Source: Haliotis cracherodii (lineage: Eukaryota). Taken from it: 64,000 nucleotides of DNA. Shown here piece after piece: positions 6,300-63,605 of the stretch. How positions within the stretch are numbered: the stretch's first letter is position 1; every line of letters starts with the position of its first letter. The notes below the pieces were generated by a model, which saw only the letters and a program-made list of their open reading frames with translations, ran no database searches and was not told where the DNA came from. Position numbers and translations under genes: made by a program. The DNA lies in the NCBI RefSeq assembly GCF_022045235.1, contig NW_027266265.1, positions 52,514,001 to 52,578,000 of the forward strand, written 5' to 3'.

Positions 6300-6583
6300 A
6301 AAACATGAAATAAATGTTTTTTCAGTGAACTGTTTCCGCTAACCTGATACTGAGTGTCGCTCAGTAAGTGACTACCTGTAACGGTGTCCCGTGATAGATT
6401 CATCTAGGGGGCCGGGGGCTGCGTCTACGGTCGCCAGGTGAGGATCGGAGCCTCAGTTTCGCCGATTTAGTCAGCGCGGTGTTCAACGGCTGTACGCGCT
6501 GGTTTATAGACCAGCGATCAAAATGATATGTAGATATACAAAGTCCCATAGAATCGCGTTGACTTACCTTTGTTTCTTTACAG
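6300..6583 (+). promoter_or_regulatory. Probable 5'UTR exon/promoter-proximal region of the ITPR-like gene
   Basis: Unique, CpG-richer stretch. Candidate donors CA|GTAAGT (6364) and CAG|GTGAGG (6438) lie upstream of the acceptor at 6583. The transcription start cannot be determined. Confidence 0.35.
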
Positions 6584-6610
6584 CTTAATGGATACAGTAG
6601 AGCTGCGGGA

Positions 6611-6693
6611 ATGGGAGAGTACTTATGCATTGGCGATCATGTGAGCCTCTATTGCGAGGAGACAGAAGGATACGCTTACAGCTACCAGTCGAG
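6611..6693 (+). CDS. ITPR: ITPR-like coding exon 1 (MGEYLCIGDHVSLYCEETEGYAYSYQS-)
   Basis: Acceptor tttacag ends at 6583. ATG at 6611 in ggaATGg context. Donor AG|GTAAGA, phase 2. Matches the ITPR N-terminal L.IGD..SLY motif. Confidence 0.88.
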
Positions 6694-35500: not shown

Positions 35501-38500
35501 TTGCCCCGCAATAAGTTTTTTGTGCAGAGTTGCGTCCTTTAGTATGCCAGGATCCTATGATGTGGGTTTGAATGCCAGTTTCACCTTGATTATGATCGAC
35601 GGTTTGTCAGCATGATACAAAAAGTCGTGATTTTCACAAAGTGGTAGCTATCTCAACTCTGGCTTTCCCCTCGCATCGAACTGACTCGCAGTGGTGTCGC
35701 TAAAATAATGTTAAAGCGGCGTTAAATCGGCATTAAATCCCAACGACTCACTCAAAAGACGAAACCAAATCAAAACGTTTCGGTTTTTGGAAGATTTGTT
35801 GGTTGGTTGTTTGACGCTGCGATCAGCAATATACCAGCTATATGACGGCTGTAAATAATCGAGTCTGGACCAGACGGGCCAGTGATTGATATCATGAGCA
35901 TTGATCTACATAATTGGGATTGATGACATGCATCAACCAAGTCAGCGATCCCGTTAGTCATCTTCTTCGACAAGCATAGTCGCCACTTACAACAAGCATG
36001 GGTTGTTGAAGACCTATTCTCTTCCCGGATCTTCCCGGGGAGGCTATTTGAAGAAAGTAATGCTAGTTCATATAGTACCATGGGTTGTATTTGTTAAAGT
36101 TAAGCCTCAGTTTAAATATATCTGTATTGAATGTGTGAAGTTTAACGGTTAACCCGATCATCCTGTTCTTATGACTGTACTACTTCCATTCAGTGGTCTG
36201 TCTTACTCGCAAGTTCTGTTTTACACCTCGCTCATATGCCAATCACATGCTCTGGCATCGAGGCTGCGCCGAAATACCACATCGGACATAGTTTACCGTT
36301 ATATTACAGGTGCGCGAGTGCCGTGAAGATCACGATCATATAGAACATACCGACACCTTGTAGCCTTGCATGTACAATCTTCAGGATCCCGCAGACATGC
36401 ATGTGTATTTTGTTTAATACTGAAATAGCAGGTAACAACTATCAGTAATGCAAGCACCGCCAAGTTGTCCTTCAGATCCCGCAGTCAGAATGTCAACTAG
36501 CATTTAGCAATATTAGCATCCTGCTGTCGGCATTGGTTCTGAAAAAAAATGATTATTTCATGTTTTTCATGTTTTTCATGTTTTTGATATATTCAAGTAC
36601 CATTCAATACACGTTGTATCATCTTCGTGAATTACATGCCTGGCATGGCATGGTAAAACATTCGCAGAATCAATGTGATAAAAACTATATTTATATAAAT
36701 GAACGACCAATTCGTTGTGATCATGTTAAATGGTCATACAAGCACAGGTTTTTTGTTGACTGTTGCTTGTTCGGTTTCCATGTCACGGCATGACACCCGT
36801 TTGAGGGCTGGGTAGATTCGGTCCCTAGTAACCAGTGATAGTCGCAACAGTCGCCTAAAATAGGTCGGGATATCCGGCTTGTCTGCTTGTATGTCAGCGT
36901 GACCCGGTGTCGTGACATTGCGCCCCCCCTGGCATGGATCGTTGCTCATACTGTCGGTCACCGGTTTGACTCGATTATATAGACTGTCGTGAAATAGCTT
37001 GAAAATTGCTGACCGTCGCGTTGATAAATATTCACTCACTGAATGTTGTATACGTACTGTTTCCTATGTCTTAAGGACCGCCTCCGTGGTCTAATGGTAG
37101 AGCCTCCGCCCGGAGAGCGGAAGGTCCGGGATTCCATCCCCGGCCGCGTCATACCATGATGTGAAAAGATAGTACTTGTTGTTACCCTGTCTGGCGCTCG
37201 GCATTAAGGGGCTAAAACAAGGACTGGTCGGCTCGGAGTCAGTATACTGTGTCTGAGTGGGGTATTTATGTTAAACTGCGGCATGGTATCTCAGTGAGCT
37301 AGCACTATAAATCGNNNNNNNNNNNNNNNNNNNNNNNNNNNNNNNNNNNNNNNNNNNNNNNNNNNNNNNNNNNNNNNNNNNNNNNNNNNNNNNNNNNNNN
37401 NNNNNNNNNNNNNNNNNNNNNNNNNNNNNNNNNNNNNNNNNNNNNNNNNNNNNNNNNNNNNNNNNNNNNNNNNNNNNNNNNNNNNNNNNNNNNNNNNNNN
37501 NNNNNNNNNNNNNNNNNNNNNNNNNNNNNNNNNNNNNNNNNNNNNNNNNNNNNNNNNNNNNNNNNNNNNNNNNNNNNNNNNNNNNNNNNNNNNNNNNNNN
37601 NNNNNNNNNNNNNNNNNNNNNNNNNNNNNNNNNNNNNNNNNNNNNNNNNNNNNNNNNNNNNNNNNNNNNNNNNNNNNNNNNNNNNNNNNNNNNNNNNNNN
37701 NNNNNNNNNNNNNNNNNNNNNNNNNNNNNNNNNNNNNNNNNNNNNNNNNNNNNNNNNNNNNNNNNNNNNNNNNNNNNNNNNNNNNNNNNNNNNNNNNNNN
37801 NNNNNNNNNNNNNNNNNNNNNNNNNNNNNNNNNNNNNNNNNNNNNNNNNNNNNNNNNNNNNNNNNNNNNNNNNNNNNNNNNNNNNNNNNNNNNNNAGTGC
37901 AATAATCTTGGACGCGACGTTAAACCCCATTTCACCACACCTCCTATGTCGTAATATTGTATTGTTTATTTTTTCTTGCAGCTCCACCAACAATGGCCTC
38001 TGTGTGTACTCCAACCAGGATCGCAACAGACCCGTCAACATTCCAAACCCTCAAGGTCAGACACCTCTCACCCTCATTTACCCAGCCACACCTTGTATGG
38101 CATACCACCAACACGAACATATTAATTAATAAACATCCCCGAAAGCCTTGGGGCAAGTCTGGATTTTTTCACATTCTTTTAGTTTCTGTACATTATGTTA
38201 CAGGACAGGTAACAAAATAATTTCTAAAACTATTTTCATATCATAGAGATGCTGGCCTCACCAAGGTCAAGCTATAGCATTGTGTTGTGTGGGATGCTGT
38301 TTCCGCATCAGGTGCACATATAAAAGGATAAAGCGTCATATTTTTTATTAGTTGGTTGATGGATCTGCCCAACCTAAAAATCAGAAATGGTGAAAAAATC
38401 TGGTTTGACGCTTTTTATTACCGCTTCGTCAGATAATCACAATTATAGAAAAAAAAGCTATCACAAAGTGTTTCGCTGCCTGGCACAAACAATTATACAT

Positions 38501-41500
38501 GCTCAACGATCCGTAAATGATATTCAGAGGTTCATCGCTACTCATACGGGTGGCACTGTATTCATGTAAAATGCTGTAAAAAATAACATTCCTGTCACAT
38601 TTTAATTTCCATAAGGGCAGATAAATATACATTTTGAAACTGTATTGTTTTCTAACCCTACCGGCCCTGAAAACCCCCGATAGTAAAAGGGTTTTCAAAT
38701 TATATATATGTTCATTTTGACAACCGATCAAAAGTTTAAGATGAACTGCGATTTCTTTGAGCCTCGCGCCTATCAGTGGACATGTTACTGTTTCGGCTAT
38801 TTGCTTCGAATCTCGACATGGTGGACTGTCATTTTAATGTCGTGAAACGGGAAAATATATGTCCTAAGACCACATACATATAGTAACATAGTAAAACAGA
38901 CCGTGGCGACATCTTCAGTGTTAGTGCTTTGAAGAGCAAAACTTCATGTAGATTCTCGTCATCTTTGAATAGCGTTTAATCACATGGAGTGGTATAAGTC
39001 TTTGTTTTTTTCACAATATGTTAATATGTTTTATTTCAGCTGTGGTGTTCCAAATGTTCATCCAGAACAGGTACAAACTCAACAAAAAATACCGAAAATG
39101 GCTTGCCTTGTCACAGAACCCGGATGTTGCGGACTCGGGGATCAAGGTCATGCTCAACCAGGCCAAGGTCAGTAAACATGTCATGAAACAGGTCATATTG
39201 TATTTAGTTTCACGCCACTAAAGCAAATTAGAATACCCTTTAATCCCATTTGACCATCCAACACGCACCTTCACACAAACATTCCTTTATCAGTAAAACA
39301 CTAAGTACGTTTGTGATTAACTTGTTGTTTAATGTGTCCTTTTCGTCATATTTTAAATTACACAAAAATGATAGATGAGTCAATAGTACTTACAGATGTG
39401 ACGGCGGCGGTGGTACCCTTTTGGTTTAAGCGCTCGCTCGTCACGCCGAAGACCCGGGTTCGATTCCCCACATGGTTACAAAGCGTGATGCCCATTTCGG
39501 ATGTTCCCAGCCGTGATTTTGGTGGAATATTTCTAAAAGCGGCATAAAACAATACTCATTCCCTAATGGGATTTTGTCAAATAGCAATCCCCGATTTGAT
39601 ACAAATCCACAGGTGTCAGTTTCTCGATCAGTTCGTTAATGTCAAATATGGTCTGAAAAAATTACGAAATGTTATAACAATAGAAATTAAAAATAGCAGC
39701 AAAGTCAATGGAATGTCTTCATGAAATAAAATAAAACGCAAATGAGTGCAGTACACGTTCCAATCTTGAGTGCAGTTGAAATGTGCATCGAACATGCTTG
39801 TTTCCTTTACCTGCACGCATCGTATAAATATAGCTTGTTGTACCTCATCCTCATCCTGCTCGGACATGTTGTCTCTGCAAGCTGTATCCGAGATGTATGT
39901 ATTCGACTTTCTCCTGCCAAGAAATATTTCTCATCAAAGATTTAGCACGTACCTGACCCACGCCCGTATGGGTCTTTACCTGTCGACGTATGTTAATTGG
40001 CCCCATCCCGTCTTTTTGTGTTTATCTTTTGCGTATACTCTCAAAATATTGTAAATTTTTATAGATAGTTTTTGTCTTACTCACTAGAATATTTTGTGTC
40101 AACAAATGTAATGCGTGGCTATTTACGTGTACTCACACTGCATTTTTCTTCCTATTCCATAGACCGCCTCCGTGGTCTAGTGGTAGAGCGTCCGCCCGGA
40201 GAGCGGAAGGTCCGGGGTTTGATCCCCGGACGTTAAAAGATGGTACTTGTTGTTACCCTGTCTGGCGCTCGGCATTAATCTAGTCCAGACTAGTACAAGT
40301 AGCAACACAAACACACACACCTACATGCACGTCGCTATAATAGTGCAATAATCTTGGACGCGACGTTAAACCCCATTTCACCTCACCTCACCTCCTATTC
40401 CATAGTAGCCTCAGGACATCTTAAACAGCAGTTTCTGTGTGTATTAGTGATATCTCACGATTAATAGTTTTATGTATACGTCACTTATAACATGCATTTC
40501 AATTATTTCATTACGTAATGCGTGTATATTATACACATATACATTAGGTCATATAGCAAATGTGCACAAGAGAAGTGATAATTCCTTGTACAGATCGACC
40601 AGTGGTCTAACTGACCGCGATTCGCCTTGAAGAGTAACGCCCCTTAGTCATGCAAGGATTCCCTCTGATTACGACCCTTGGTCCATATTCCGTGCCCGTA
40701 TGTTTCACCAGTCATAAACTTGTGCCACTTGTCTCTCGATCAAGCTGACACGTCGTGATTTAACTGAAATACTGCCCAAAGCGGCGTCAAACAAACTCAC
40801 TCACTCAACGTTAAGAACCTGAACGACCACGGTAGCTTAGGCTCCGATACAGAACATTGACCCCTGGTAAAAGTATGTATCTAGCCCGCTGAGTTTTTGT
40901 TTTACAATGACCCTTAATTGATAACAAAATCTTAAATGAAGGGGTTTGGACATTACGCGCTCAACATGGTGGCATCATTAGAATGAGGTTTAGTTGCTTC
41001 TGTCCTTTACTATGAATGCTTAATTAACCATACTAATGCTAACAAACAAGACGAACATGTCTACGTTATCAACAGATAATACTATTACTGCACGTCATCA
41101 ACTTCAGTGAGCCTGATCCAGTGCGACCTAAATAATAAACCTACTTTCGGAACACCGACTAACCAACACTCATAACGCCAATGCCGTATCATGGTTATAC
41201 TTAATTACATAGTGATGTTATATTCAGAAAACTCATATTCCCAGCTGGTCTATTCATGACTGACATATACCATGCGGAGTATCTCCGGTATCCGTCACTA
41301 TATAACGTCGAGAATGCTTTTATCGTCCTACTTTTCACACGCAATATATTGTAGGTGTATGCTGTTCCACGTACAGGCAATTACGTTCCCCTCGTTATAC
41401 TGATCTGCACAAAAGATAAGATGTATGTGTATGTCACGCCCCATATAAATGAGTTATCTCCCCTTCGACCAACTCTTCCTTACACAAAGGATACAACGTG

Positions 41501-56500: not shown

Positions 56501-59500
56501 CAGGGCGGATCAGTGATTCGATTATTCCACAAAGAGCTGGAGGCGTATCTGGTCGCCGAGGGCCTGTTTGACGAGGTTGTCACTGAAGATGGTATGAGTT
56601 AATGCATCATTTTGTTTCTTGCTGACATCTTAATCTGTATTCGATTATATCTTCTATCATTTCAAAACAATGTAACTGATGGGATATGAAAATATACACT
56701 GTTCAAATATGATTTCAGTTCACTTCCGGGTTCGTGCAATCGACCAGCATCGTCCCAAGTCCCTGTCTCCATCTACTTCCGGTATCACCTATTGGCAGAT
56801 CGAGGCTGAACACAGTATTCTTGATGGTGAGGCAGCCTCGTTTCCATTTCCTCAGCGTATTACCCGTGATAGTTAAACATATTCTTTTTTTCCATTTGAC
56901 AGAACTAAAATGCACTATTCAAGTATTACATCACATTTATTCGCATGTACACAAACAATGCAAAGAGGGTGAAACGCATATGTAATTCCTCGTCAACGTG
57001 AAATCTAATAGCTTGACATGTCTTTACCATGTAAATGACTTGCACTAGCAGAACTAGTCCATATATATCGTTATATATTCCGTGACCCTGCTTAAGACGA
57101 AGTCGGATGAGTATAGCCATGTATATCAATACGAGCATTTATAGATGTAAGACAAGATGAAAAAGGTTTAGGAATAGGATTAAATAGCTGTAATGCTCAG
57201 GTAATCCAGTCGATAAACCTGGTAAGATATTGGAAATTCAATATTGACAAAAGGTAGTTCGTCTGTATTCTTAGTTAACGCTCAAAAGCCAAACTAACAG
57301 GATTTTTTTAATAATAGAATACAAAATGCGAATACTTCCAATCAGTTTCCTCGATCCCATTGACATGCCTACTTCCGTTATGTTTACGTTGACAGAAGGT
57401 TATCAATGTTTCACTTTTTTTAGGTGACGTACTGCGCTGGGAACAACAGATTCGCTTACGTCACATGTTGACGCGACAGTATTTGTGTATTGACTCCAGG
57501 TCAGAGGTCAGCCTCTGTCCTGACCCTTCTGACCCCAGGACGGTATTCCGGCTTCACTCTGTTCTCAAGGTAGGTCAAGTCGAGTTCGATTCTCTAAATG
57601 GTACAATTGCTGAATCTCCATCCCTGTGCCCCTCGCTGTGATATTGCATGGATATTGCTCTCTCATTCACTATACCAGTGTGTTAAAATCGAATTGCTAT
57701 CATTCCCATGTTTGATATTGTATACTAAGGTATGATATTGTATATTAGGATATAATATTGTACTATGCTTGTCGTGAGAGGCGACTAACGGGATCGGGTG
57801 GTCAAACTCGCTGATTTGGCTGATGCGCGTCATCGCTTACCAATTGGGTGGATCGGTGCTCATGGTGTCAATCACTGGATTGTCTGATCCAGACTCGATT
57901 ATTTACAGACCGCCGCCAAAAAGCTGGAATATTGCTGAGTGCGGCGTTATACAACAAACAAAATAATCGTGTATTATATTCTATTACATTGTAGTATATA
58001 GTGTATAATACTGTATGATATTGTATAGTAAGGTATAGTAAGGTATAATAAGGTATAATAAGGTATACTAATGTGTAATAGTGTATGGTATTTTATGATA
58101 ATATATGATAGTTATGATATTGCACGGTATTGTATAATAGTGTCCGGTATTGTGTAATATTGCATCACAGCGTCTAATATTGATGCTTAAAGAATCATGT
58201 TCAATTCCCGTGTTACAGGAGCGGGATGAGATCCAGTTTGAGAGCTACGCCCGGATCGAGCACATGTTGACAGGCTGCTGGCTACACGCACTCAAAGGTT
58301 CCATTCATTCTCATCCAGTGCACAGTCAGTTTATGTTTACGTGTTTTTAGCTCTGCTGGTGTCGGATGCACGGGCCGCAGGTACCACCGAGATGCTATAC
58401 ATCTCCCAGGCCAAACCATATACATATTATATTCAGAAATAGTCAATATATACTCCTGACCTGTTACCTCGAAGACAACCTTCCTTAATCACTGTCGAAT
58501 CACAGTGGCTGGGATTGCTCATTTCAGTTACTTACTCATATCGAATGTTTCGTTTAATCTATGAACTTCGAGATAAAAGGATTTTAATTTCATTAGAGTA
58601 ATATTCTAGTATACGCCAATATTAGTCAATAATGCCAAATATCTTTCATCATTACTTTTCTGTTAATCCATATTTACTTTATTTTACCTTAAACCTACCT
58701 TATTTTATCCTAGCTTTACCATACTTCTATTAGCCGTATTTCATTGCTATTCTTTTAGTTTTTCTTATAATTTCTACTTTGCTCGGGACTTTATGTATTC
58801 CTTGAAAATATTCTTCTTTTGAGTTAATTGCAGTTCTCGGCATGTTCTAAACCATACTCTATATTAAATATAATCGTCCTCGATTATTTATATATCAATA
58901 ATATAACCATTTTTATCGTTTTAGAATGGAGCGATAAGGCGTGAGTGAGTTAAAGTTAAACGTCGCGTGGGCATTATTTCAGCCTTATAGTGACGAGACC
59001 AAGTTGATATATTGAAAAAGGGAGTCATGAATGCAAAGTTATATTTAAAAACAAATATTATCAAACATATTTCGGCATAACACTACCATTACCACCAGTG
59101 AATTAGAGATAAAGCATTGAATAAAAATGTATATAATAGAATGGAGGTATCATAATATTAGGCGATGTTGAAGGAGGCACTGAGCTTGGCCTATTACCTT
59201 ACGGTTAAAGTTTCTGTTTACAAGATGAGTTTATGCCGTATTAAATTAACCGATATATGTATTCGTCATATTGATATTGCACGCTGACCGTCGTAAACAG
59301 GTCATGTTTTTTGTGGAAAAACTACGAACTGTGATCTCACTGCTCTCTACCCTCTTGTTAGCGGTCGTATGTTAATCTCTGTGCAATCAATGTCCTGTTC
59401 AGATGAAGACTATCAGAAGCATCAGTACCTGGATGGTGACAATGAGCGTTCTATGCAAGGGCTGCGCTGGGACGGCGCTGCGGTCAGAAAGGTAGATTAT

Positions 59501-62500
59501 ACGGCGCTTCCATGAATATATTGACTATGTAAACGCATCTCCACAAACCCTTCAATGTCACATTTGTTATCCTTTATTATTAAAAAAGCGGAGGACTATA
59601 AGTGAAATAAAAATTAAAATATAAATATTATTACTGAAAATCAGCTAAGGAGGAATGTAAAGTTTTGCATCTGCTTGTTTATGAATCATACAGTAACTTT
59701 AAACACAAAAGTTCGTTTTTATATGTTGGAGAAATACAATTAATAAACTACTCATAAACAGAGGGGCATATACTCGAATGTTCGTTCTATATTTTTTAGA
59801 CTTAAATTTTCTCCGTCCTTCCTACAGGTGTCCGCCAGCAATGAGAGCGTGTACGACGACGCCTACACCATACAGAGGGTGGAGAAGGTGGACGTCGGCA
59901 ACTTCAACTACGTGGCCGGCATGGTGCCCTTCCTCTTCAACCTCATACAGGACGTGCGTACTTTAACTTGTTGTCCATTGTACATTAACGTTTGTACTTC
60001 AATATACAAAAACACAACGACCGATTTTGTTGATGATATCCACAATACTGAAATAGTGGCATTTGTCAGTAGCTGCCCACATTAACAATAGTCATGTAAT
60101 ATGTGGCTTTTCATGAACATCAAGGTCAAAGATTGACACTTAAGGAAGATGCCCAGTTGATGAGGCACGTTACTGATTGCAGCACGTGCTGTTACTGTAT
60201 GTCTTTAACCCTGTCTTTGCAGCGTCGGAGTGCATCACCGCTGAATGCAAGGAAGACCCACGGAATACTTATGGTGCGTGCATATTTTTAGGATAAAATA
60301 TAAACTTTTACTGCAGTTGGCTCTAAATCCAGTTTACGTTTCCAAGATTTGTTGTTGAAAAGTGACCAAGGGCTTATTGTTATTGTGTGCTTTCTGCATA
60401 TATGAGAGCCCGTTTCTTCAATAACCCATGGTGGTCGTGAAGGCCGGCTCAAATTTTCATCGGATGGTATCAATGTGTGATTATGATAGATGCATATATA
60501 CTCATACTGCATATATCTTCCCCGGTTTGTCTGGCAAATAGTTCATTATCAACATCAGCATATTGATTTGATAGTTTTTCTTAGAAGTTGAAGGATAACA
60601 AAGTAGAAAGAAATATGGATAACACCTTTGTTGTACTGTAATAGCGACGTTTCGGTATAGATAATTTTTTGTCTACTTTTTTTGGCAACGCAAACAACAT
60701 GCACTCACTCCCATGGTTCTCTTGTTTTCCAGGCCTTGAGAGAGGTGAAGGACTTCATGTTGCCACACAACAAACCAGACAAAGACAGACAGAAGCTCAT
60801 GCGGAACTTACGGGTAAGACAATGAGACAATCAGACACCTATGGTCTTGTAAGAGACGACAAAGTAGATGGGACGGATGTGTGACTTCGTTGATATAGCT
60901 GGAATATTGCCACACAAGCATTTCATAAAGACTCGGCTAATCCTCCACTCCTCCTGCTCAGGTGATCGACCTGCTGGTGAAGCTGCTCCAGTCCCCACTA
61001 AGAGATGGGGATGAGGAGGCGCATCTCATCAGGATCTTCAAGGAGGCCTACGATGTCCTCCACGCCTACATGATAGGCAAGAGCAGGAAGAACGCCCTCT
61101 ACTTCGCCAAGTACATCGACTTCTTCCAGACACAGTTCACGCAAAAGGTACTCCGGACTTCAGTTTTCTTAGCATGATATAAGGGAGGAACTCTGTTCCA
61201 ATCACCTGGATTACCTATATTCATTTTAAACCCGTAATGTAGGTGGTCGAAAGAAAATATGTGACCCCCATGGCCAGGGGAAAAGGGACCTTATGGGTGT
61301 TAGGATACATAGTGCTAGAATACCATCGTTTGACGTCAACTTCTGTGAAGATCGCAATTTGTGCGGAAAGTACAATAATATCTTTTTTTTCTCTTGTTAT
61401 TTCGTTATTTCATAAAAACATTATTTCAAAACCTTTCAGCATACATATCTATCTACTTTCAATTCATAAGACATTGTCTAAAAATTGCATTTATTGCATA
61501 AATAGTTAAAGTCGGATAATGAGTTCATATGTTTGATGTCGTATGTCTCTCTATTATTAAATAGGAATTGAAGCTTGTGAATTGTATTTTTGTGTGCCGA
61601 AGATGCTGTAGTTTTAAAATATAATGAAGAGTCAAAATGTGATTTATTTTTTATTTTTTATTTTTTTCACCATCAGGTCTTAATCTCCTGGTGGGTCACA
61701 TATATCATTTAAAAACATTTTACTATTGTGTTGTATTTGTTGAAAATTACCTATGTATTGATGCATCTAGAGTCGAATCTATTGCTTGTGTCCATGTGTT
61801 TGTGCTTGCCCAAAGCGCCTACAACGGATCTGGAAGTGTCGTGTTTTATTTCTGATGTGTCGATGTGTTTTATTTCTGATGTGTCGATGTGTTTTATTTC
61901 TGATGTGTCGATGTGTTTTATTTCTGATGTGTCGATGTGTTTCCTTACACTACTCTGTCCATGACCTCAGGGTGGTATCGGCCTTAACGTGGCCTCTATG
62001 ATTGTCGAGCTGATCCGGGACAAGCGGAAGATTGTGGACAGGATCACTAACAACCACATCGACATCTTCATTCAGCTGCTCAGGTCCAACCAGGTAAGGT
62101 CACCCGTACCCTAGGGTGTTTACATCTTCTGGCTTATCTTTGAGAAGGTGGAATAAATAACAACAGTGAACCGAAAATTTGTTTGTCTCATCTTTTGTTA
62201 AACAAATAAAAATGGCATAAACAGTGGAGCTTCATTAAGTTCTAGGATTTATTCGCATTTCCACTGTAACTGTGTTCCGATGTTGGACTATCGTGCCTAT
62301 AACGATACATATTGTCTCTACCGATATATCGAAGACATTTTTTTAGGATTGTAATTCAAATCAAACCCTTGTAGTTCATAGCGCAAGTTTAGGTTTGCGG
62401 TGCTTGGACCCTTGTTCGTTCAAGAATCCTGTGATCGTTGGTTCCAATCCTAGATGCTCCCAGATTTTGATGCTTGGTTTTTGAGCATCGTACCCATAGA

Positions 62501-63605
62501 AGTTGTAAACGTCTAAGACTTGGGTCCCCCACATCAAGCTGCCACGCCGTGATATCATTGTAATACTGCTCAAGACAGCATTAAACAAACCTCTTTCTGG
62601 AACTTTTTTGCTTCCAGAATTACCGGTTCCTGGACCTCCTGCAGGTGCTGTGTGTCTGCGACTGCGTCGCCATCCCCAACAACCAGAGCTACATCGTGCA
62701 GCAGTGGCTGCGATCCTACAAGGTCAGCTTACAGAGTGACAATTATCATTTAGTGTTTCAATCGTACCATTGAACTCAATCCATTTGGTTTTATTTGTTT
62801 AGGGGCGGTCGGGTAGCCTAGTGGTTAAAGCGATCGCACGTCACGCTGGAGATCCGGGTTCGATTCCCGACATGGGTACAATGTGTTAAGCTCATTTCTG
62901 GTGTCCCCTGCCGTGATATTTCTGGAATATTACTCAAAGCGGCGTATAACCATACTCACTCGCTCACTAATTTCTTTTAGCGTACATTTTAGGTTTTCCT
63001 TAAGCTGGCTTGCTATAAATACATTTGAAAAGACACAAAGACCAATCCGTAAATCAGACATAAGAAATCGCCCCATCTTTATTCCAAACATTTCACTTTA
63101 CTGGTTCAATATATTGATAATAATATATAGAATTTCTTTTATTTCTTTGTTGTATTTGGGTTCGTACAAATTTAAAACCCTGTAAATTTCGGACAATGTA
63201 TTCATAATTATGTATATTGAAGGTAAGATTATATCTTGGGTATAAGATAAATCTGCGTCGGTCCCGTACCTATTCCAGAAACCGGGGACGTGTATACCAG
63301 ATAGCGTCATCAAACCGTTAAATCCTTCAGACAAAGAATGGTGTACTCAGCTTGGTCGAAAAAGCAATCTCCCGTGGTGTTTGAAGTTATAAACACCAGT
63401 CACAAATCACGAATGGCTTACACGATATTTGCTTTTTGTTAAAACCAATTCAATTTCGTTGACATTCTGTAATCTTGTCGATATTATATTACAGGACAGT
63501 GTTTACTTAATGGACCGTGGTCAGAATATCAACAAGAAGCCGAACATCGTCTACATCTCTGTTGACGGCGGCTCCCACTGGGTGGCACTGCATCACTTTG
63601 TTGAC
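6611..63605 (+). CDS. ITPR: Divergent inositol 1,4,5-trisphosphate receptor-like (ITPR/IP3R-family) Ca2+-release channel, 5' part (20 coding exons, 670 aa; gene continues beyond window)
   Basis: Manually spliced exons join in frame at GT-AG sites. They give ITPR-family motifs: YLCIGDHVSLY (cf. FLHIGDICSLY), RYGEIVQLKH (cf. QYGNVIQLLH), GGSVIRLFH (cf. GGDVVRLFH), RQKLMR, SRKN (cf. YRKN) and RFLDLLQVLCV (cf. RFLDYLSDLCV). Divergence from canonical ITPR1 is high. Confidence 0.93.
7960..8222 (+). mobile_element. SINE family B
   Basis: Near full-length copy. Confidence 0.87.
8781..9040 (+). mobile_element. Retroposon family C
   Basis: Same 5' start GACCCG(C/T)GAAGATCC and the same tail. Confidence 0.87.
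10453..10721 (+). mobile_element. Retroposon family C
   Basis: Full length, flanked by TCACACGTTT direct repeats. Confidence 0.9.
11534..11656. mobile_element. 123-bp Tc1/mariner-type MITE
   Basis: Near-palindrome with TIR CTACTCAAAAGAAGTTAAGGATCACC, flanked by TA on both sides. Confidence 0.88.
12365..12692 (+). mobile_element. SINE family D (tRNA head plus Meta/MESC-like central domain)
   Basis: tRNA-like head, then GTCATACCAAAAGACGTTAAAA.ATGGTA...CCTGGCGCTCGGC, which resembles the MetaSINE central domain (from recall, unverified). Sits inside a decayed reverse family B copy. Confidence 0.82.
13685..14130. repeat. Minisatellite, 30-bp unit CGTGTCCACAATCCTTGGTGTATACAGATA, ~14-15 copies
   Basis: Direct tandem periodicity; accounts for the six overlapping repetitive ORFs. 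Confidence 0.97.
14986..15031 (-). ncRNA. Minimal type-I hammerhead-ribozyme-like motif (U3-A8 core variant), probably Penelope-associated
   Basis: Minus strand reads AAGUGC-UUGAUAA-C-GAUGU(UAGAACCU)ACAUC-GAAA-CG-UC-GCUCUU. Stems I and II pair, and stem III is a palindromic CG. Confidence 0.5.
15186..15338 (+). mobile_element. SINE family A (tRNA-like head, ~160 bp)
   Basis: A-box TAGCCTAGTGG, shared 3' tail, TSD TGATTCCG. Confidence 0.85.
15633..15902 (+). mobile_element. Retroposon family C inserted into a Penelope-like remnant
   Basis: Full length, flanking ATGTCCT repeats. Confidence 0.88.
18859..18910. repeat. Poly-C run plus (CA)n microsatellite
   Basis: Seen directly. Similar low-complexity tracts at 1341-1400, 26485-26526, 27520-27645 and 52850-52883. 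Confidence 0.9.
19306..19872 (+). mobile_element. Two adjacent SINE family B copies (old ~19306-19562; young 19593-19872)
   Basis: The second copy is near consensus and flanked by CCAATACA repeats. Confidence 0.88.
20632..20754. mobile_element. 123-bp Tc1/mariner-type MITE (second copy)
   Basis: Same TIRs, same length, TA flanks. Solo TIR ends also at ~28475, ~48530 and ~50597. Confidence 0.88.
22039..22205 (-). mobile_element. SINE family A
   Basis: Full-length reverse copy with TSD TATTTCAG. Confidence 0.88.
22837..23855. repeat. Minisatellite, 38-bp unit ACCTCTCAGTATTTGACCCCCAGCATCCTTGTGTACAG, ~27 copies
   Basis: Direct tandem periodicity with no spacers. Confidence 0.97.
28665..28921 (+). 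mobile_element. SINE family B
   Basis: Full-length copy with a small deletion in the head. Confidence 0.9.
28938..29009. mobile_element. 72-bp hairpin MITE
   Basis: TIR C(G/A)TCTTCCCGAGGCAAGGG.GTTAAC with flanks TACATTCGA/TACATTCGT. The same terminus appears at ~24455-24499. Confidence 0.7.
31272..31437 (+). mobile_element. SINE family A
   Basis: A-box and B-box (GGTTCGATTCCC), tail ending (CTCA)n, TSD CTTAACAAAAGG at 31260-31271 and 31438-31449. Confidence 0.92.
32588..32849 (-). mobile_element. Retroposon family C (reverse)
   Basis: Full-length reverse copy ending TCTTCACGGGTC. Confidence 0.9.
33046..33156. repeat. 21-bp tandem repeat CATGACGTCCACTTATGTATT, ~5 copies
   Basis: Visible tandem periodicity. 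Confidence 0.93.
34545..34712 (+). mobile_element. SINE family A nested in an older reverse family C copy
   Basis: TSD TGATGACAAAGG at 34533-34544 and 34713-34724. The flanks are a decayed family C element (~34410-34760, minus strand). Confidence 0.9.
34905..35072 (+). mobile_element. SINE family A
   Basis: Full-length copy, TSD CTACCTAGC. Confidence 0.9.
35795..36040 (-). mobile_element. Retroposon family C (reverse)
   Basis: Near full-length reverse copy. Confidence 0.85.
37076..37941 (+). mobile_element. SINE family D spanning the assembly gap
   Basis: Head lies before the gap and tail after it. TSD TCCTATGTC(T/G)TAA at 37062-37074 and 37942-37954. Confidence 0.85.
37315..37895. other. 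Assembly gap (581 N)
   Basis: Run of N characters. Confidence 0.99.
37982..38055 (+). CDS. ITPR: ITPR-like exon 2 (S-STNNGLCVYSNQDRNRPVNIPNPQ-)
   Basis: Acceptor ttcttgcag, donor G|GTCAGA. Phase 2 to 1 links exons 1 and 3 in frame. Confidence 0.85.
39040..39167 (+). CDS. ITPR: ITPR-like exon 3 (AVVFQMFIQNRYKLNKKYRKWLALSQNPDVADSGIKVMLNQAK)
   Basis: Acceptor tttcag, donor AAG|GTCAGT. Aligns to ITPR 'CLFKLCPMNRY'. Confidence 0.88.
39403..39560 (+). mobile_element. SINE family A (diverged)
   Basis: Recognisable head CGTCACGCCGAAGACCCGGGTTCGATTCCC and tail. Other partial copies at ~9667-9770 and ~26606-26800. Confidence 0.8.
40163..40392 (+). mobile_element. SINE family D with internal deletions
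   Basis: TSD TCCTATTCCATAG at 40150-40162 and 40393-40405. Confidence 0.88.
41693..41967 (+). mobile_element. SINE family B
   Basis: TSD CCTCATATTAACG at 41680-41692 and 41968-41980; ends 37 nt before exon 4. Confidence 0.92.
42005..42091 (+). CDS. ITPR: ITPR-like exon 4 (MAAEAENKDNEAEQKRQHGKRVRYGEIVQ)
   Basis: Acceptor cctacag, donor CAG|GTCAGT. Matches ITPR '[28 protein letters not shown]'. Confidence 0.92.
42156..42378 (+). mobile_element. Retroposon family C (single-unit head variant)
   Basis: Same 5' start but only one 22-nt internal unit. Other partial copies: 1-30(-), 3411-3467(-), 9478-9602(-), 22490-22700, 34090-34190, 45487-45810 and 57761-57962. Confidence 0.87.
42420..43000 (+). 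pseudogene. Highly decayed Tc1-like transposase remnant (related piece at ~45060-45200)
   Basis: Broken motifs VIG-MLQ, QETGS and LQDQAH recall Tc1 'AIGMLQ..RETGS..FQQDNA.PH'. About 120 bp is similar to 45060-45190. Confidence 0.35.
43105..43380 (+). mobile_element. SINE family D, 5'-truncated
   Basis: Central domain and tail. An older copy lies at ~13255-13477. Confidence 0.85.
43620..44290 (-). mobile_element. Penelope-like retroelement remnant (RT C-terminus plus 3'UTR), frameshifted
   Basis: Frameshifted translation: LELEIQQTSETASSVSYLDI...RLYEKRDYFNFLTVNFPVLLNNIPPALPSGVYISQLLRNNRACSFYQDFK...KKLYGRHVGDISKFDASVTKMMSDAIPY*, stop at 43873-43875. Related 3' fragments at ~185-345, ~10750-11090 and ~15430-15630, all minus strand. 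Confidence 0.75.
46049..46126 (+). CDS. ITPR: ITPR-like exon 5 (LKHTFSGKFVHMSTTHTSMKDKNNMK)
   Basis: Acceptor cttccag, donor AAG|GTAACC. Matches 'LLHLKSNKYL...EKNAMR'. Confidence 0.9.
46530..46610 (+). CDS. ITPR: ITPR-like exon 6 (VSMHEFNAKNAQFRILPRYKVKSEGEV)
   Basis: Acceptor gttccag, donor GTG|GTACGT. Matches 'FYIQPFYKLRSIGDS'. Confidence 0.92.
47540..47686. repeat. 31-bp G-rich tandem repeat GGTGTCTGACGGGTTTGGGCTGGCCGGGTCA, ~4.7 copies
   Basis: Near-perfect tandem copies. Confidence 0.95.
48273..48490 (-). mobile_element. SINE family B (reverse, 5'-truncated)
   Basis: Reverse complement of the family B body and tail. Confidence 0.9.
48752..48849 (+). CDS. ITPR: ITPR-like exon 7 (VQLYDQIVFESVKSPGHYFHTSDPFQIDNFSCG)
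   Basis: Acceptor ttcccag, donor GG|GTATGT, phase 2. Matches '[21 protein letters not shown]'. Confidence 0.9.
49082..49234. repeat. 19-bp tandem repeat AGACTTGACAAACAATTCG, ~8 copies
   Basis: Visible tandem periodicity. Confidence 0.95.
50017..50140 (+). mobile_element. SINE family B, internally deleted (head joined to tail)
   Basis: Head GGGGCACGGGTGGCCCAGTCG joined directly to the tail; flanked by the direct repeat CTCACGAAACACACG. Confidence 0.85.
50430..50590 (+). mobile_element. SINE family A
   Basis: Full-length copy, TSD TGTTTACTA. Inserted at the end of a Tc1-type TIR (CTACTCAAAAGAAG at 50597). Confidence 0.9.
50671..50785. repeat. 23-bp tandem repeat ACCTCCCTAGTGGCTGACCAGTG, ~4.5 copies
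   Basis: Visible tandem periodicity. Confidence 0.93.
52140..52500 (-). mobile_element. Possible decayed Penelope-like end (GIY-YIG C-terminus plus degenerate hammerhead)
   Basis: Translation LHVSKPITGICKGGVFKRF resembles PLE endonuclease C-termini; downstream is ATGATGA...GAAACGTT. Weak evidence. Confidence 0.3.
54298..54458 (+). mobile_element. SINE family A
   Basis: TSD CTCGACCAAGAATT at 54284-54297 and 54459-54472. Confidence 0.9.
55600..55875 (+). mobile_element. SINE family B
   Basis: Full length, flanked by TCAAACTCAT repeats. More decayed copies at ~17703-17837, 24129-24328(-), 24836-25070, 35490-35750, 40595-40806, 53476-53615 and 62385-62590. Confidence 0.9.
56259..56346 (+). CDS. 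ITPR: ITPR-like exon 8 (-SELNLGVERSSFTLIGSLRENLELDKFVR)
   Basis: Acceptor tttacag, donor AGG|GTTGGT. Phase compatible with exons 7 and 9. Confidence 0.88.
56504..56591 (+). CDS. ITPR: ITPR-like exon 9 (GGSVIRLFHKELEAYLVAEGLFDEVVTED-)
   Basis: Acceptor tttacag, donor G|GTATGA. MIR-repeat motif matching 'GGDVVRLFHAEQEKFL'. Confidence 0.93.
56719..56826 (+). CDS. ITPR: ITPR-like exon 10 (VHFRVRAIDQHRPKSLSPSTSGITYWQIEAEHSILD-)
   Basis: Acceptor atttcag, donor G|GTGAGG. Matches 'VFLR...SATSSKALWEVE'. Confidence 0.92.
57424..57569 (+). CDS. ITPR: ITPR-like exon 11 (GDVLRWEQQIRLRHMLTRQYLCIDSRSEVSLCPDPSDPRTVFRLHSVLK)
   Basis: Acceptor ttttag, donor AAG|GTAGGT. Matches 'WNSLFRFKHLATGHYL'. Confidence 0.93.
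58219..58297 (+). CDS. ITPR: ITPR-like exon 12 (ERDEIQFESYARIEHMLTGCWLHALK-)
   Basis: Acceptor gttacag. Weak donor G|GTTCCA, with an in-frame alternative donor after 58324. MIR motif SY.R+.H..T..W+H. Confidence 0.88.
59403..59491 (+). CDS. ITPR: ITPR-like exon 13 (DEDYQKHQYLDGDNERSMQGLRWDGAAVRK)
   Basis: Acceptor ctgttcag, donor AAG|GTAGAT. Phase 1 to 0 fits the neighbouring exons. Confidence 0.85.
59828..59953 (+). CDS. ITPR: ITPR-like exon 14 (VSASNESVYDDAYTIQRVEKVDVGNFNYVAGMVPFLFNLIQD)
   Basis: Acceptor cctacag, donor GAC|GTGCGT. Codon third positions are GC-rich. Aligns to the 'EDKEAFAIVPVS..EVRDLDF' region. Confidence 0.9.
60223..60273 (+). CDS. ITPR: ITPR-like exon 15 (RRSASPLNARKTHGILM)
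   Basis: Acceptor tctttgcag, donor ATG|GTGCGT. Symmetric phase 0 and fills the expected gap before exon 16. Confidence 0.75.
60733..60813 (+). CDS. ITPR: ITPR-like exon 16 (ALREVKDFMLPHNKPDKDRQKLMRNLR)
   Basis: Acceptor ttttccag, donor CGG|GTAAGA. Carries the RIH-domain motif RQKLMR. Confidence 0.94.
60962..61147 (+). CDS. ITPR: ITPR-like exon 17 (VIDLLVKLLQSPLRDG...GKSRKNALYFAKYIDFFQTQFTQK)
   Basis: Acceptor tgctcag, donor AAG|GTACTC. Matches 'KLLQAPF...DYRKNQEYIAK'. Confidence 0.94.
61836..61942. repeat. 24-bp tandem repeat GTGTCGATGTGTTTTATTTCTGAT, ~4.5 copies
   Basis: Visible periodicity just upstream of the exon 18 acceptor. Confidence 0.93.
61971..62093 (+). CDS. ITPR: ITPR-like exon 18 (GGIGLNVASMIVELIRDKRKIVDRITNNHIDIFIQLLRSNQ)
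   Basis: Acceptor acctcag, donor CAG|GTAAGG. Matches '[29 protein letters not shown]'. Confidence 0.93.
62618..62722 (+). CDS. ITPR: ITPR-like exon 19 (NYRFLDLLQVLCVCDCVAIPNNQSYIVQQWLRSYK)
   Basis: Acceptor cttccag, donor AAG|GTCAGC. Matches 'RFLDYLSDLCVS...IPVTQELI'. Confidence 0.94.
62802..62968 (+). mobile_element. SINE family A
   Basis: Full-length copy in intron 19. Confidence 0.88.
63495..63605 (+). CDS. ITPR: ITPR-like exon 20 (DSVYLMDRGQNINKKPNIVYISVDGGSHWVALHHFVD)
   Basis: Acceptor attacag, donor GAC|GTGAGT. Phase 0 continuation. Confidence 0.85.

What the first reader, a model, noticed from the sequence alone, without database searches (positions are those of the whole stretch)
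56504..61147. Non-canonical IP3-receptor paralog with a remodelled ligand pocket
Seen: the spliced protein is clearly ITPR-family but very divergent from canonical ITPR1. By manual alignment to mouse IP3R1 numbering it keeps R241, R265 (VHFR), R506, K508, R511 (RQKLMR) and R568/K569 (SRKN). It changes K249 to A, R504 to K and Y567 to S, and replaces the T266-T267-G268-R269 loop with VRAIDQHR plus an insertion. Established: R265, K508 and R511 are the critical IP3 contacts, and T267, R269 and Y567 also coordinate IP3 phosphates. Inference: this is probably a second, invertebrate-retained ITPR lineage (possibly the IP3R-B-like clade) with lower IP3 affinity or a different ligand, i.e. a poorly characterised Ca2+-release channel.
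Basis: partly seen in the sequence, partly recalled or inferred. Interest (0 to 1): 0.8.

Follow-up and report, generated by a model that had tools for sequence, protein, structure and literature searches.

The report
Abalone IP3R-B type channel gene
This stretch holds the front part of an expressed black-abalone gene for a non-canonical cousin of the IP3-receptor calcium channel. The family is known but barely studied, and its ligand pocket and pore both differ from the textbook receptor.

Summary
Window 56504-61147 contains ten GT..AG exons, with both ends exact exon borders. They encode residues 283-600 of RefSeq XP_071092373.1 ("ITPR3-like", 2857 aa, Haliotis cracherodii). The gene runs from window 6581 to about 41 kb past the window end. 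Spliced contigs in three public runs show it is transcribed.

The residue calls are confirmed: R241, R265, R506, K508, R511, R568 and K569 are kept. K249 is A, R504 is K and Y567 is S. The T266-R269 loop is replaced and is 5 residues longer. Only the loop's register is ambiguous.

- The genome has a separate canonical ITPR on C56, with FLRTTGR, NYRKNQ and GGGIGD, 90% identical to rat IP3R1 in one exon.
- It has one RyR on C45.
- It has three non-canonical paralogs; the window gene is one of them.

The same pocket signature is near-invariant across 82 relatives, from Capsaspora and choanoflagellates to molluscs. It is therefore an ancient family trait, not decay. This fits the published IP3R-B subfamily, reported not to bind IP3.

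None of the 82 has the GGG[VI]GD pore filter.

I could not fetch canonical full-length proteins, so no tree joining A-type, B-type and RyR was built. The scan's notes hold no earlier ITPR finding.

Verdict: new member of a known kind.

The parts
6581..6691 (+). first coding exon found in the window (P0240 aa 34-70). It holds the conserved start motif MGEYLCIGD. The exon for aa 1-33 was not found in the window or in the 10 kb upstream.
   Evidence: exact match to P0240
37980..38054 (+). coding exon, aa 71-95. It lies 85 nt downstream of the N run 37315-37895, which was left untouched.
39039..39167 (+). coding exon, aa 96-138 (suppressor-domain region)
42005..42091 (+). coding exon, aa 139-167
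46046..46129 (+). coding exon, aa 167-194
46530..46613 (+). coding exon, aa 194-221
48752..48850 (+). coding exon, aa 221-253
56260..56346 (+). coding exon, aa 254-282. Its 3' border at 56346 is shown by an RNA joint.
56504..56591 (+). exon with GGSVIRLFHKELEAYL. R288 (codon 56519-56521) corresponds to R241. A296 (56543-56545) stands in place of K249.
56719..56826 (+). exon with the remodelled loop VHFRVRAIDQHRPK. Codons: R315 56727-56729, R317 56733-56735, D320 56742-56744, R323 56751-56753, K325 56757-56759.
57424..57569 (+). beta-trefoil (MIR-like) exon, aa 348-396
58219..58297 (+). beta-trefoil (MIR-like) exon, aa 397-422
59403..59491 (+). coding exon, aa 423-453
59828..59953 (+). coding exon, aa 453-494
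60223..60273 (+). 51-nt micro-exon, aa 495-511. It is included in the spliced contigs: together with the next exon it fills the 131-nt gap.
60733..60813 (+). exon with KPDKDRQKLMRNLR. K528 (60781-60783) replaces R504. R530 (60787-60789) = R506. K532 (60793-60795) = K508. R535 (60802-60804) = R511.
60962..61147 (+). first RIH-domain exon with GKSRKNALYFAK. S579 (61082-61084) replaces Y567. R580 (61085-61087) = R568. K581 (61088-61090) = K569.
61971..62093 (+). RIH-domain exon, aa 601-641
62615..62722 (+). RIH-domain exon, aa 641-676 (PF01365 match at window 62615-62719)
63495..63605 (+). last coding exon inside the window, aa 677-713. Fifty more coding segments follow, up to window-equivalent 104784.

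Best explanation
SHOWN.
- The window holds the 5' quarter (20 of 70 coding segments, aa 34-713) of the black-abalone gene for XP_071092373.1, a 2857-aa member of the IP3R/RyR superfamily.
- The gene is intact, spliced and transcribed.
- It is one of three non-canonical paralogs in this genome. They sit beside one canonical ITPR and one RyR.
- It belongs to a clade that reaches back to Capsaspora and choanoflagellates. That clade carries a near-invariant, non-canonical version of the IP3 pocket.

INFERRED.
- This clade is the published IP3R-B subfamily.
- The protein forms a tetrameric ER channel. Its N-terminal clam (second beta-trefoil plus first armadillo domain) still clamps an anionic ligand.
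- The full ARM1-side basic cluster would do the clamping: K528, R530, K532, R535, R580, K581.
- On the trefoil side there is an R315-x-R317 pair.
- The trefoil loop that holds the 4-phosphate of IP3 is replaced by a longer loop with a conserved Asp. Y567 is Ser and K249 is Ala.
- I therefore expect IP3 to bind poorly or not at all. The channel would be gated by a different phosphorylated ligand, by Ca2+, or by both.
- The gate and C-terminal Zn-finger motifs are kept. The GGG[VI]GD filter is not, so permeation probably differs as well.
For: GENE AND PRODUCT.
- P0240 aa 34-2857 match the locus exactly in 70 segments.
- The chromosome length 59495813 equals that of C2.

EXPRESSION.
- GT..AG joints appear in contigs of 3 runs from 3 studies.
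- All 7 exonic differences among the 40 listed are synonymous.
- The protein is 99% identical to the H. rufescens protein.

FAMILY CENSUS IN THIS GENOME.
- C56 is canonical.
- C45 is the RyR: 4 of 4 PF02026 matches lie there.
- C2a, C2b and C67 are the non-canonical loci.

CLADE.
- 165 proteins at E<=0.001 among 1.84 billion for a gene-specific exon.
- The 82-row tree follows the species tree from Capsaspora to molluscs.

POCKET.
- Column counts over 82 rows: R265-position R in 75, T267-position R in 75, R504-position K in 79, K508 K in 81, R511 R in 81, Y567-position S in 75, R568 R in 76, K569 K in 79.
- 7 of 13 named positions are invariant, against 136 of 2857 overall (P = 6e-7). Against 27 of 391 in the ligand-binding region, P = 4e-6.

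PORE.
- 0 of 82 rows have GGG[VI]GD.
- The canonical gene of the same genome has GGGIGD.

LITERATURE.
- IP3RB is absent from vertebrates, fly and nematode, and is understudied (passages).
- IP3R-B 'could not bind IP3' (passage in PMC9113742).
- Pocket roles of R269, K507/K508, R510/R511, Y567, R568 and K569 (passages in PMC13503717).
- K508Q abolishes IP3 binding (passage in PMC13319452).
Against: - No binding or channel data exist for any mollusc member. The 'cannot bind IP3' statement is second-hand. Alzayady 2015 is not held, and it concerns the Capsaspora protein.
- I could not confirm that XP_004347257.1 is the clone that was tested.
So are R568 and K569. A basic residue (R323 or K325) may stand in for R269. 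Residual IP3 binding is therefore not excluded.
- The register of the loop differs between alignment methods.
- No canonical IP3R or RyR rows are in my tree, so monophyly of the clade against them rests on the literature and on motif and identity contrasts.
- The runs that hold the spliced contigs are only guessed to be RNA, although spliced contigs are hard to explain otherwise.
- No structure model of the pocket could be made.
Confidence: 0.7

Rival explanations
1. Same gene and same clade, but still an IP3-gated Ca2+ release channel. The retained R265/K508/R511/R568/K569 equivalents, plus the extra Arg and a stand-in for R269, would bind IP3 with lower or merely different affinity.
For: - 5 of the 11 classic contacts are identical and one more is a conservative change.
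- K325 is K or R in nearly all metazoan rows.
- The pocket is under strong constraint, as expected for a working ligand site.
Against: - T266, T267, G268 and Y567 are all changed.
- A near-invariant Asp (D320) sits in the loop that holds the 4-phosphate in IP3R1.
- The Capsaspora member carries the same signature. The family is reported not to bind IP3 (passage).
Confidence: 0.25
2. A fast-evolving, lineage-specific duplicate of the canonical abalone or mollusc ITPR, whose pocket is decaying.
For: - RefSeq names it 'ITPR3-like'.
- Overall it scores higher against IP3Rs (874 bits) than against RyRs (404 bits) in the PDB profile search.
Against: - Orthologs with the same loop and pocket occur in hemichordates, Trichoplax, a sponge, choanoflagellates and Capsaspora.
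- The changed residues are invariant rather than drifting.
- The gene differs from H. rufescens at only about 0.5-1% of residues.
Confidence: 0.02
3. A pseudogene or a gene-model artefact.
For: - Exon-level Pfam hits are all below the curated cut-offs.
- The exon for aa 1-33 was not found nearby.
Against: - 70 coding segments are open and match the protein exactly.
- Spliced contigs appear in three runs.
- The exonic differences seen are synonymous only.
- Pfam's precomputed full-length domain set is complete for the cluster representative.
Confidence: 0.01

Closest known systems
IP3R-B subfamily (Alzayady et al. 2015, Mol Biol Evol; leech ip3rb1/ip3rb2 in bioRxiv 10.1101/2020.08.17.254631)
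   Same: - The taxon spread is the same: Capsaspora, lophotrochozoans and hemichordates, with no vertebrate, fly or nematode member.
- It coexists with a canonical IP3R and a RyR in one genome.
- Its architecture is IP3R-like.
- The leech genome also holds five family genes: 2 A-type, 2 B-type and 1 RyR.
   Different: - Abalone has 1 A-type, 3 B-type and 1 RyR.
- The window gene belongs to a mollusc-wide sub-branch (B1). That branch arose with its chromosome neighbour (B2) after the split from nemerteans and annelids.
- I could not see the accession lists of either paper. One paper is not held and the supplements are closed. The equation of my clade with IP3R-B is therefore by distribution and by the non-IP3RA Capsaspora member.
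Canonical IP3 receptors (ITPR1-3, also called IP3R-A). Structures include 3uj0, 6mu1 and 6dqj.
   Same: - The domain order is the same: suppressor domain, beta-trefoil, ARM/RIH domains, RIH-associated domain, six-TM channel, and a C-terminal CFIC...H..H motif.
- R241, R265, R506, K508, R511, R568 and K569 are kept.
- The S6 sequence ...IFGIIVDTF... is kept.
   Different: - K249A, R504K and Y567S.
- The T266-G268 loop is replaced and is 5 residues longer, and it carries an Asp.
- There is no GGG[VI]GD filter; the gene reads YGLIGDMFEE instead.
- The Ca2+-sensor motif reads CDGQN, where I recall canonical receptors having a Glu.
- Scoring against the PDB is about 0.25 bit per residue in the ligand region. 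The genome's own canonical exon scores about 1.7 bits per residue.
Ryanodine receptors
   Same: - Same superfamily.
- The channel domain aligns (E = 1.7e-52).
[quoted passage not shown]
   Different: - There are no RyR-repeat matches at this locus: 4 of 4 lie on C45.
- The length is 2857 aa, against about 5000 aa for a RyR.
- The N-terminal 870 profile positions align to IP3R1.

Membership tests
IP3R/RyR (RIH) channel superfamily | The domain set Ins145_P3_rec, MIR, two RYDR_ITPR, RIH_assoc and Ion_trans | tested here: met
   - Precomputed Pfam for P0163, the cluster representative 99% identical to the window's product, lists PF08709, PF02815, PF01365, PF08454 and PF00520.
- Exon pieces alone gave only sub-threshold MIR and RIH hits.
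IP3R/RyR (RIH) channel superfamily | Conserved S6 gate region and C-terminal Cys/His motif | tested here: met
   - G2533, I2534, V2536, D2537, T2538 and F2539 are invariant in 38 sequences. So are C2557, C2560, H2577 and H2582.
- This region aligns to ITPR2 2478-2679.
IP3R-B subfamily | A lineage separate from the canonical IP3R-A, which coexists in the same genome | tested here: met
   - The canonical gene on C56 has FLRTTGR, NYRKNQ and GGGIGD.
- The window gene and two paralogs lack these motifs.
IP3R-B subfamily | Groups with published IP3R-B members and apart from IP3R-A and RyR in a tree | tested here: inconclusive
   - The tree of 82 relatives holds Capsaspora XP_004347257.1 (not the IP3RA accession of PMC9522344), plus Lottia, Capitella and Saccoglossus rows.
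- No A-type or RyR rows could be fetched.
- The published accession lists were not visible (supplements closed).
IP3R-B subfamily | Present in non-vertebrate holozoans; absent from vertebrates, Drosophila and C. elegans | tested here: met
   - No named row among the 81 and 85 hits, or among the 10 looked-up representatives, comes from a vertebrate, arthropod or nematode.
- These searches are not exhaustive.
IP3R-B subfamily | Does not bind IP3 (shown for the Capsaspora member) | not testable with these tools
   - Only sequence inference is possible.
- The abalone and Capsaspora pockets share the signature.
- The claim itself was read second-hand, in a passage of PMC9113742.
Canonical IP3 receptor (ITPR1-3 / IP3R-A) | The IP3-contact set R265, T266, T267, G268, R269, R504, K508, R511, Y567, R568, K569 | tested here: not met
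   - 5 are identical: R265, K508, R511, R568 and K569.
- R504 is K.
- T266, T267, G268 and Y567 are changed.
- R269 is unsettled.
- The list of 11 contacts is partly recalled (Bosanac 2002) and partly read in PMC13503717.
Canonical IP3 receptor (ITPR1-3 / IP3R-A) | GGG[VI]GD selectivity filter | tested here: not met
   - The gene reads YGLIGDMFEE at aa 2487-2496.
- 0 of 82 clade rows have the motif.
Ryanodine receptor | RyR repeats (PF02026) and a size of about 5000 aa | tested here: not met
   - 4 of 4 PF02026 matches in the genome lie on C45.
- The product is 2857 aa.

The most novel reading that the evidence does not exclude
IP3R-B receptors, of which abalone keeps three, may be a separate class of intracellular ligand-gated channel rather than weak IP3 receptors.

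Their pocket signature has been frozen since before animals arose:
- H-x-R-x-R on the trefoil strand;
- a longer Asp-bearing loop;
- Lys at the 504 position;
- Ser at the 567 position.

That pocket would recognise a different phosphorylated ligand. Candidates are another inositol phosphate, a lipid head group, or a phosphoprotein pseudo-ligand of the IRBIT kind.

The loss of the GGGxG[DE] filter after sponges branched off would give placozoan and bilaterian members a different ion selectivity.
Probability: 0.3. Interest if true: 0.75.

Novelty: new member of a known kind. Interest (0 to 1): 0.4.

Why it matters
IP3R-B is the third branch of the IP3R/RyR superfamily. It is missing from every standard model animal: vertebrates, fly and nematode. 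Its ligand, ion selectivity and physiology are therefore unknown. The leech work found one member marking touch neurons.

This report does three things:
- It shows that the pocket and pore differences are fixed, constrained family traits rather than noise.
- It gives exact residues to mutate.
- It shows that a farmed and endangered mollusc carries three expressed or intact copies next to a fully canonical receptor. That makes a clean side-by-side functional comparison possible.

It is not a new kind of system. The clade was named in 2015, and RefSeq already models the gene.

Tried and rejected
WHAT LED NOWHERE.
- Pfam on ten exon-bearing stretches gave only sub-threshold MIR and RIH hits. 5 of 10 had any hit and 0 of 10 passed a cut-off.
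- A PDB search with the loop exon alone gave four chance hits and no IP3R.
- A PDB search with the pore exon alone gave nothing.
- Two word-index searches were meant to reach canonical IP3Rs from the channel domain and from the RQKLMR/YRFLD region. They returned only relatives of the window gene (81 of 1807 and 85 of 116 candidates). I left the third search unused, because no full-length canonical query was available.
- Exon-length queries cannot reach 2700-aa proteins under the tool's length rule.
- As a result I built no tree with A-type and RyR rows.
- Structure prediction of the ligand-binding region was not possible. P0240 exceeds 1200 aa, exons may not be joined, and none of the stored proteins of 1200 aa or less covers its first 700 residues.
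- Alzayady 2015 (PMC4540961) is not held, so I used passages in papers that cite it. Its supplementary tables and those of the leech paper probably list IP3R-B accessions, but they could not be seen.
- Rfam found nothing in the window.
- ORFs of 130 aa or more are repeats or minisatellite read-throughs.

WHAT I CONSIDERED AND REJECTED.
- Pseudogene.
- Sole canonical ortholog.
- Recent fast-evolving duplicate.

See the rival explanations for the evidence on each.

JOINED STEP LEFT OUT. Searches on window sequence were done exon by exon. Where a full-length product was needed, I used database proteins that the tools returned (P0240 and relatives).

Full report
WHAT IS AT THE COORDINATES.
The + strand of window 56504-61147 carries a run of short open stretches with clear IP3-receptor motifs, such as GGSVIRLFHKELEAYL, VHFRVRAIDQHRPK, RQKLMRNLR and GKSRKNALYFAK.

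Contigs of three public runs (X1, X3, X8, from three studies) lie on these stretches only. They skip the DNA between them at GT..AG borders. Those joints define exons 56504-56591, 56719-56826, 57424-57569, 58219-58297, 59403-59491, 59828-59953, 60962-61147 and 61971-62093. A 131-nt gap in the contigs equals exons 60223-60273 plus 60733-60813.

The runs are only guessed to be RNA. Even so, spliced contigs show that a processed transcript exists.

A fourth run (X18, unspliced, about 3% different) covers the introns as well. One search listed 40 differences, with 200 more not shown. Of those 40, 7 lie in exons, and all 7 are synonymous third-position changes.

THE GENE AND ITS OWNER.
A gene-specific exon downstream of the window (L026:2200-2538) was searched against 1.84 billion representatives. 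It found 165 proteins at E<=0.001.

Following those hits through two cluster look-ups led to P0240. This is XP_071092373.1, 'inositol 1,4,5-trisphosphate-gated calcium channel ITPR3-like isoform X1', 2857 aa. It is encoded on a chromosome of 59,495,813 bases, which is the length of the window's contig C2. A neighbour protein on the same chromosome is named Haliotis cracherodii.

P0240 residues 34-2857 match the locus exactly in 70 coding segments, running from window 6581 to window-equivalent 104784. Twenty of these segments (aa 34-713) are in the window. The finding covers aa 283-600.

The exon for aa 1-33 was not found in the window or in the 10 kb upstream. RefSeq isoforms differ there and at two micro-exons outside the ligand region.

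The protein is 99% identical to the H. rufescens protein and 96% to the H. rubra protein.

FAMILY CENSUS IN THIS GENOME.
Pfam searches of the whole genome place family members at five loci.
- C45 is the ryanodine receptor. All 4 RyR-repeat matches lie there.
- C56 is a canonical IP3 receptor.
  - One exon reads [33 protein letters not shown]... It is 45 of 50 residues identical to rat IP3R1 237-286.
  - Another exon has NYRKNQ.
  - Its pore reads GGGIGD, with ...LNLIFGVIIDTFADLRSEK after it.
- The other three loci are non-canonical.
  - The window gene (C2a).
  - A second gene 1.7 Mb away on the same chromosome (C2b). It matches the P0203 cluster at 92-100% in its exons.
  - A third gene on C67. 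It is 89-97% identical to an H. asinina protein, P0268.
- The three non-canonical proteins are 43-58% identical to one another.

THE POCKET, RESIDUE BY RESIDUE.
Rat IP3R1 numbering was anchored with the canonical C56 exon. Three alignments were then compared: P0240 by phmmer against solved structures, a 38-sequence clade profile against solved structures, and the same profile by hhalign against the C56 exon.

All three agree on these points:
- R241 = R288.
- K249 becomes A296.
- R504 becomes K528.
- R506 = R530, K508 = K532 and R511 = R535.

The plain pairwise alignment is gappy in this stretch and places it differently.

The profile alignment shifts everything by two, so that H313 = H261 and R317 = R265. 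A shift of two keeps the in/out pattern of a beta strand. I infer that both arginines face the pocket in either case.

An equivalent of R269 is not settled.
- R323 aligns with it, but this position varies in the clade (R, K, N...).
- K325 is K or R in nearly all metazoan rows.

The PMC13503717 passages read place the residues as follows. R269 lies at the 4-phosphate. K507, R510, K569 and Y567 lie at the 5-phosphate. R568 lies at the 1-phosphate. R265 and R503 form the surrounding charge. A passage in PMC13319452 says K508Q abolishes IP3 binding.

On this reading, the ARM1 side of the pocket is intact apart from Tyr to Ser. The trefoil loop that cradles the 4-phosphate is rebuilt.

THIS IS A FAMILY TRAIT UNDER CONSTRAINT.
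I aligned 82 relatives, leaving out isoforms, near-identical rows and some partial models. The same residues recur from Capsaspora and choanoflagellates to molluscs:

| Position (IP3R1 numbering) | Residue in the clade | Rows out of 82 |
|---|---|---|
| R265 | R | 75 |
| T267 | R | 75 |
| K249 | A | 73 |
| R504 | K | 79 |
| K508 | K | 81 |
| R511 | R | 81 |
| Y567 | S | 75 |
| R568 | R | 76 |
| K569 | K | 79 |

The exceptions are mostly gaps in partial models.

In the 38-sequence alignment, H313, R315, R317, P324, Q531, K532, R535, G577, S579, R580, K581 and Y585 are invariant. D320 is near-invariant.

Against 27 of 391 within aa 230-620, P = 4e-6. A pocket that had simply lost its job would not look like this.

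PLACE IN THE FAMILY.
The tree used FastTree on 2467 columns, with SH-like support only, and I placed the root on Capsaspora by choice. It follows the species tree in this order:
1. Capsaspora
2. a choanoflagellate group
3. the sponge Oscarella
4. Trichoplax
5. amphioxus and hemichordates
6. two old lophotrochozoan branches

One of those two branches holds the C67-type genes (19 rows). The other (45 rows) splits within molluscs into the window's type (19 rows: a chiton, gastropods, bivalves; support 100) and the C2b type (13 rows). Together these form a 32-row group with support 100. The window protein sits with the other gastropods (8 rows, support 100).

The tree has no canonical IP3R or RyR rows, so it cannot test the clade's monophyly against them. 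That part rests on three things:
- the contrast with C56;
- the finding that the Capsaspora member XP_004347257.1 is not the accession listed as Capsaspora IP3RA in PMC9522344;
- the literature.

WHAT IS KNOWN.
- Passages of the leech preprint say the bilaterian ancestor had IP3RA, IP3RB and RyR.
- IP3RB was lost in vertebrates and is absent in D. melanogaster and C. elegans.
- The subfamily is understudied.
- Helobdella has two A-type, two B-type and one RyR gene.
- ip3rb2 marks touch neurons.
[quoted passage not shown] It cites Alzayady et al. 2015.
- That paper is not held. From memory only, I recall its abstract saying that Capsaspora IP3R-A bound IP3 and released Ca2+, and that IP3R-B did not.
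- Searches for the terms CO.IP3R-A, CO.IP3R-B, IP3RB and 'IP3R-B family' found nothing further on the subfamily.
- The scan's own notes hold no finding with the words ITPR, IP3, inositol, trisphosphate or ryanodine.

HOW IT MOST LIKELY WORKS.
Shown:
- The gene is intact, transcribed and constrained.
- It has the full IP3R-type domain set.
- The S6 gate region and the C-terminal Cys/His motif are conserved.

Inferred:
- It is a tetrameric ER channel whose N-terminal clam still closes on an anionic ligand, held by K528, R530, K532, R535, R580, K581 and the R315/R317 pair.
- With the 4-phosphate loop replaced by a longer, Asp-bearing loop, and with Y567 and K249 lost, IP3 should fit poorly.
- I put about 0.55 on 'not usefully gated by IP3', 0.25 on 'IP3-gated with altered affinity', and the rest on unknown.

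BEYOND THE WINDOW.
The pore loop reads RYGLIGDMFEE, where ITPR2 reads QGLRNGGGVGDVL.
- 0 of 82 clade rows have GGG[VI]GD.
- 6 of 82 keep GGGxG[DE]. These are the sponge and five rows of the choanoflagellate group.
- 41 of 82 have [YFH]GL[IV]GD.

The classic filter was therefore lost after sponges branched off, while the canonical gene in the same genome keeps GGGIGD.

A second difference concerns the motif I recall as part of the Ca2+ sensor (LCE[NG]HN in IP3R and RyR). It reads [IM]CDGQ[NH] in animal members and CEG.N in the unicellular ones.

LIMITS.
- No canonical full-length proteins could be fetched.
- No structure model of the pocket could be made.
- No tissue information is available.
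- The run kinds are guessed.
- The key functional claim about IP3R-B was read second-hand.
- Supplements that may list IP3R-B accessions were closed.

Noticed in passing
L027:6696-6722 (window-equivalent 100696-100722), outside the window: The pore loop of this gene reads RYGLIGDMF(EE) in place of the GGG[VI]GD selectivity filter. 0 of 82 relatives have the classic motif. Only the sponge and five rows of the choanoflagellate group keep GGGxG[DE]. The canonical C56 gene of the same genome has GGGIGD (L033:6202-6450).
   Followed up: partly
L024:7121-7123 (window-equivalent 91121-91123): The motif I recall as carrying a Ca2+-sensor Glu (LCE[NG]HN) reads ICDGQN here. Asp stands at this column in 71 of the 73 rows from animals. 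Glu stands there in 8 of 9 unicellular rows.
   Followed up: partly
G000:C2:54257281-54329621 (-) and G000:C67:11210146-11292025 (-): There are two further non-canonical paralogs. The C2 copy lies 1.7 Mb from the window gene. By equal contig lengths in the hit tables, the two types also share a chromosome in H. rufescens, Biomphalaria, Gigantopelta, Mactra, Mya and Pinctada. This suggests an old tandem duplication with kept linkage.
   Followed up: partly
window 45531-45795: An intronic copy (88% over 249 nt) of the 3' end of a downstream exon plus its intron start (window-equivalent 75114-75354). The 42 exonic bases are identical and encode EPHHMNQNIMISHG. The copy abuts a SINE-like repeat.
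   Followed up: partly
window 57762-57963: A very abundant repeat lies in the intron between two beta-trefoil exons. Summed contig depth there is 10^5 to 10^6 in all four runs, with many loose ends sharing one consensus. Similar translated repeat pieces (…RHAEDPGSIPDMGTMCE…) recur through the introns.
   Followed up: no
L025:188-784 (window-equivalent 104188-104784): The last exon adds about 200 residues after the usual C-terminal domain. The extension is Pro-rich and acidic. It is also present in the Pomacea and H. rufescens proteins.
   Followed up: no
window 13691-14160 and 22837-23855: Two intronic minisatellites: 30-nt units x 15.5 copies, and 38-nt units x 26.9 copies. The second explains the strong strand skew at 22-24 kb.
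   Followed up: no
window 37315-37895: A run of 581 N lies 85 nt upstream of the second coding exon found. It was left as it is.
   Followed up: no
window-equivalent 68274-68309 and 84698-84736: Two micro-exons (aa 821-831 and aa 1774-1786) are present or absent among RefSeq isoforms of three abalone species. There are also alternative first exons. None of this variation touches the ligand-binding region.
   Followed up: partly
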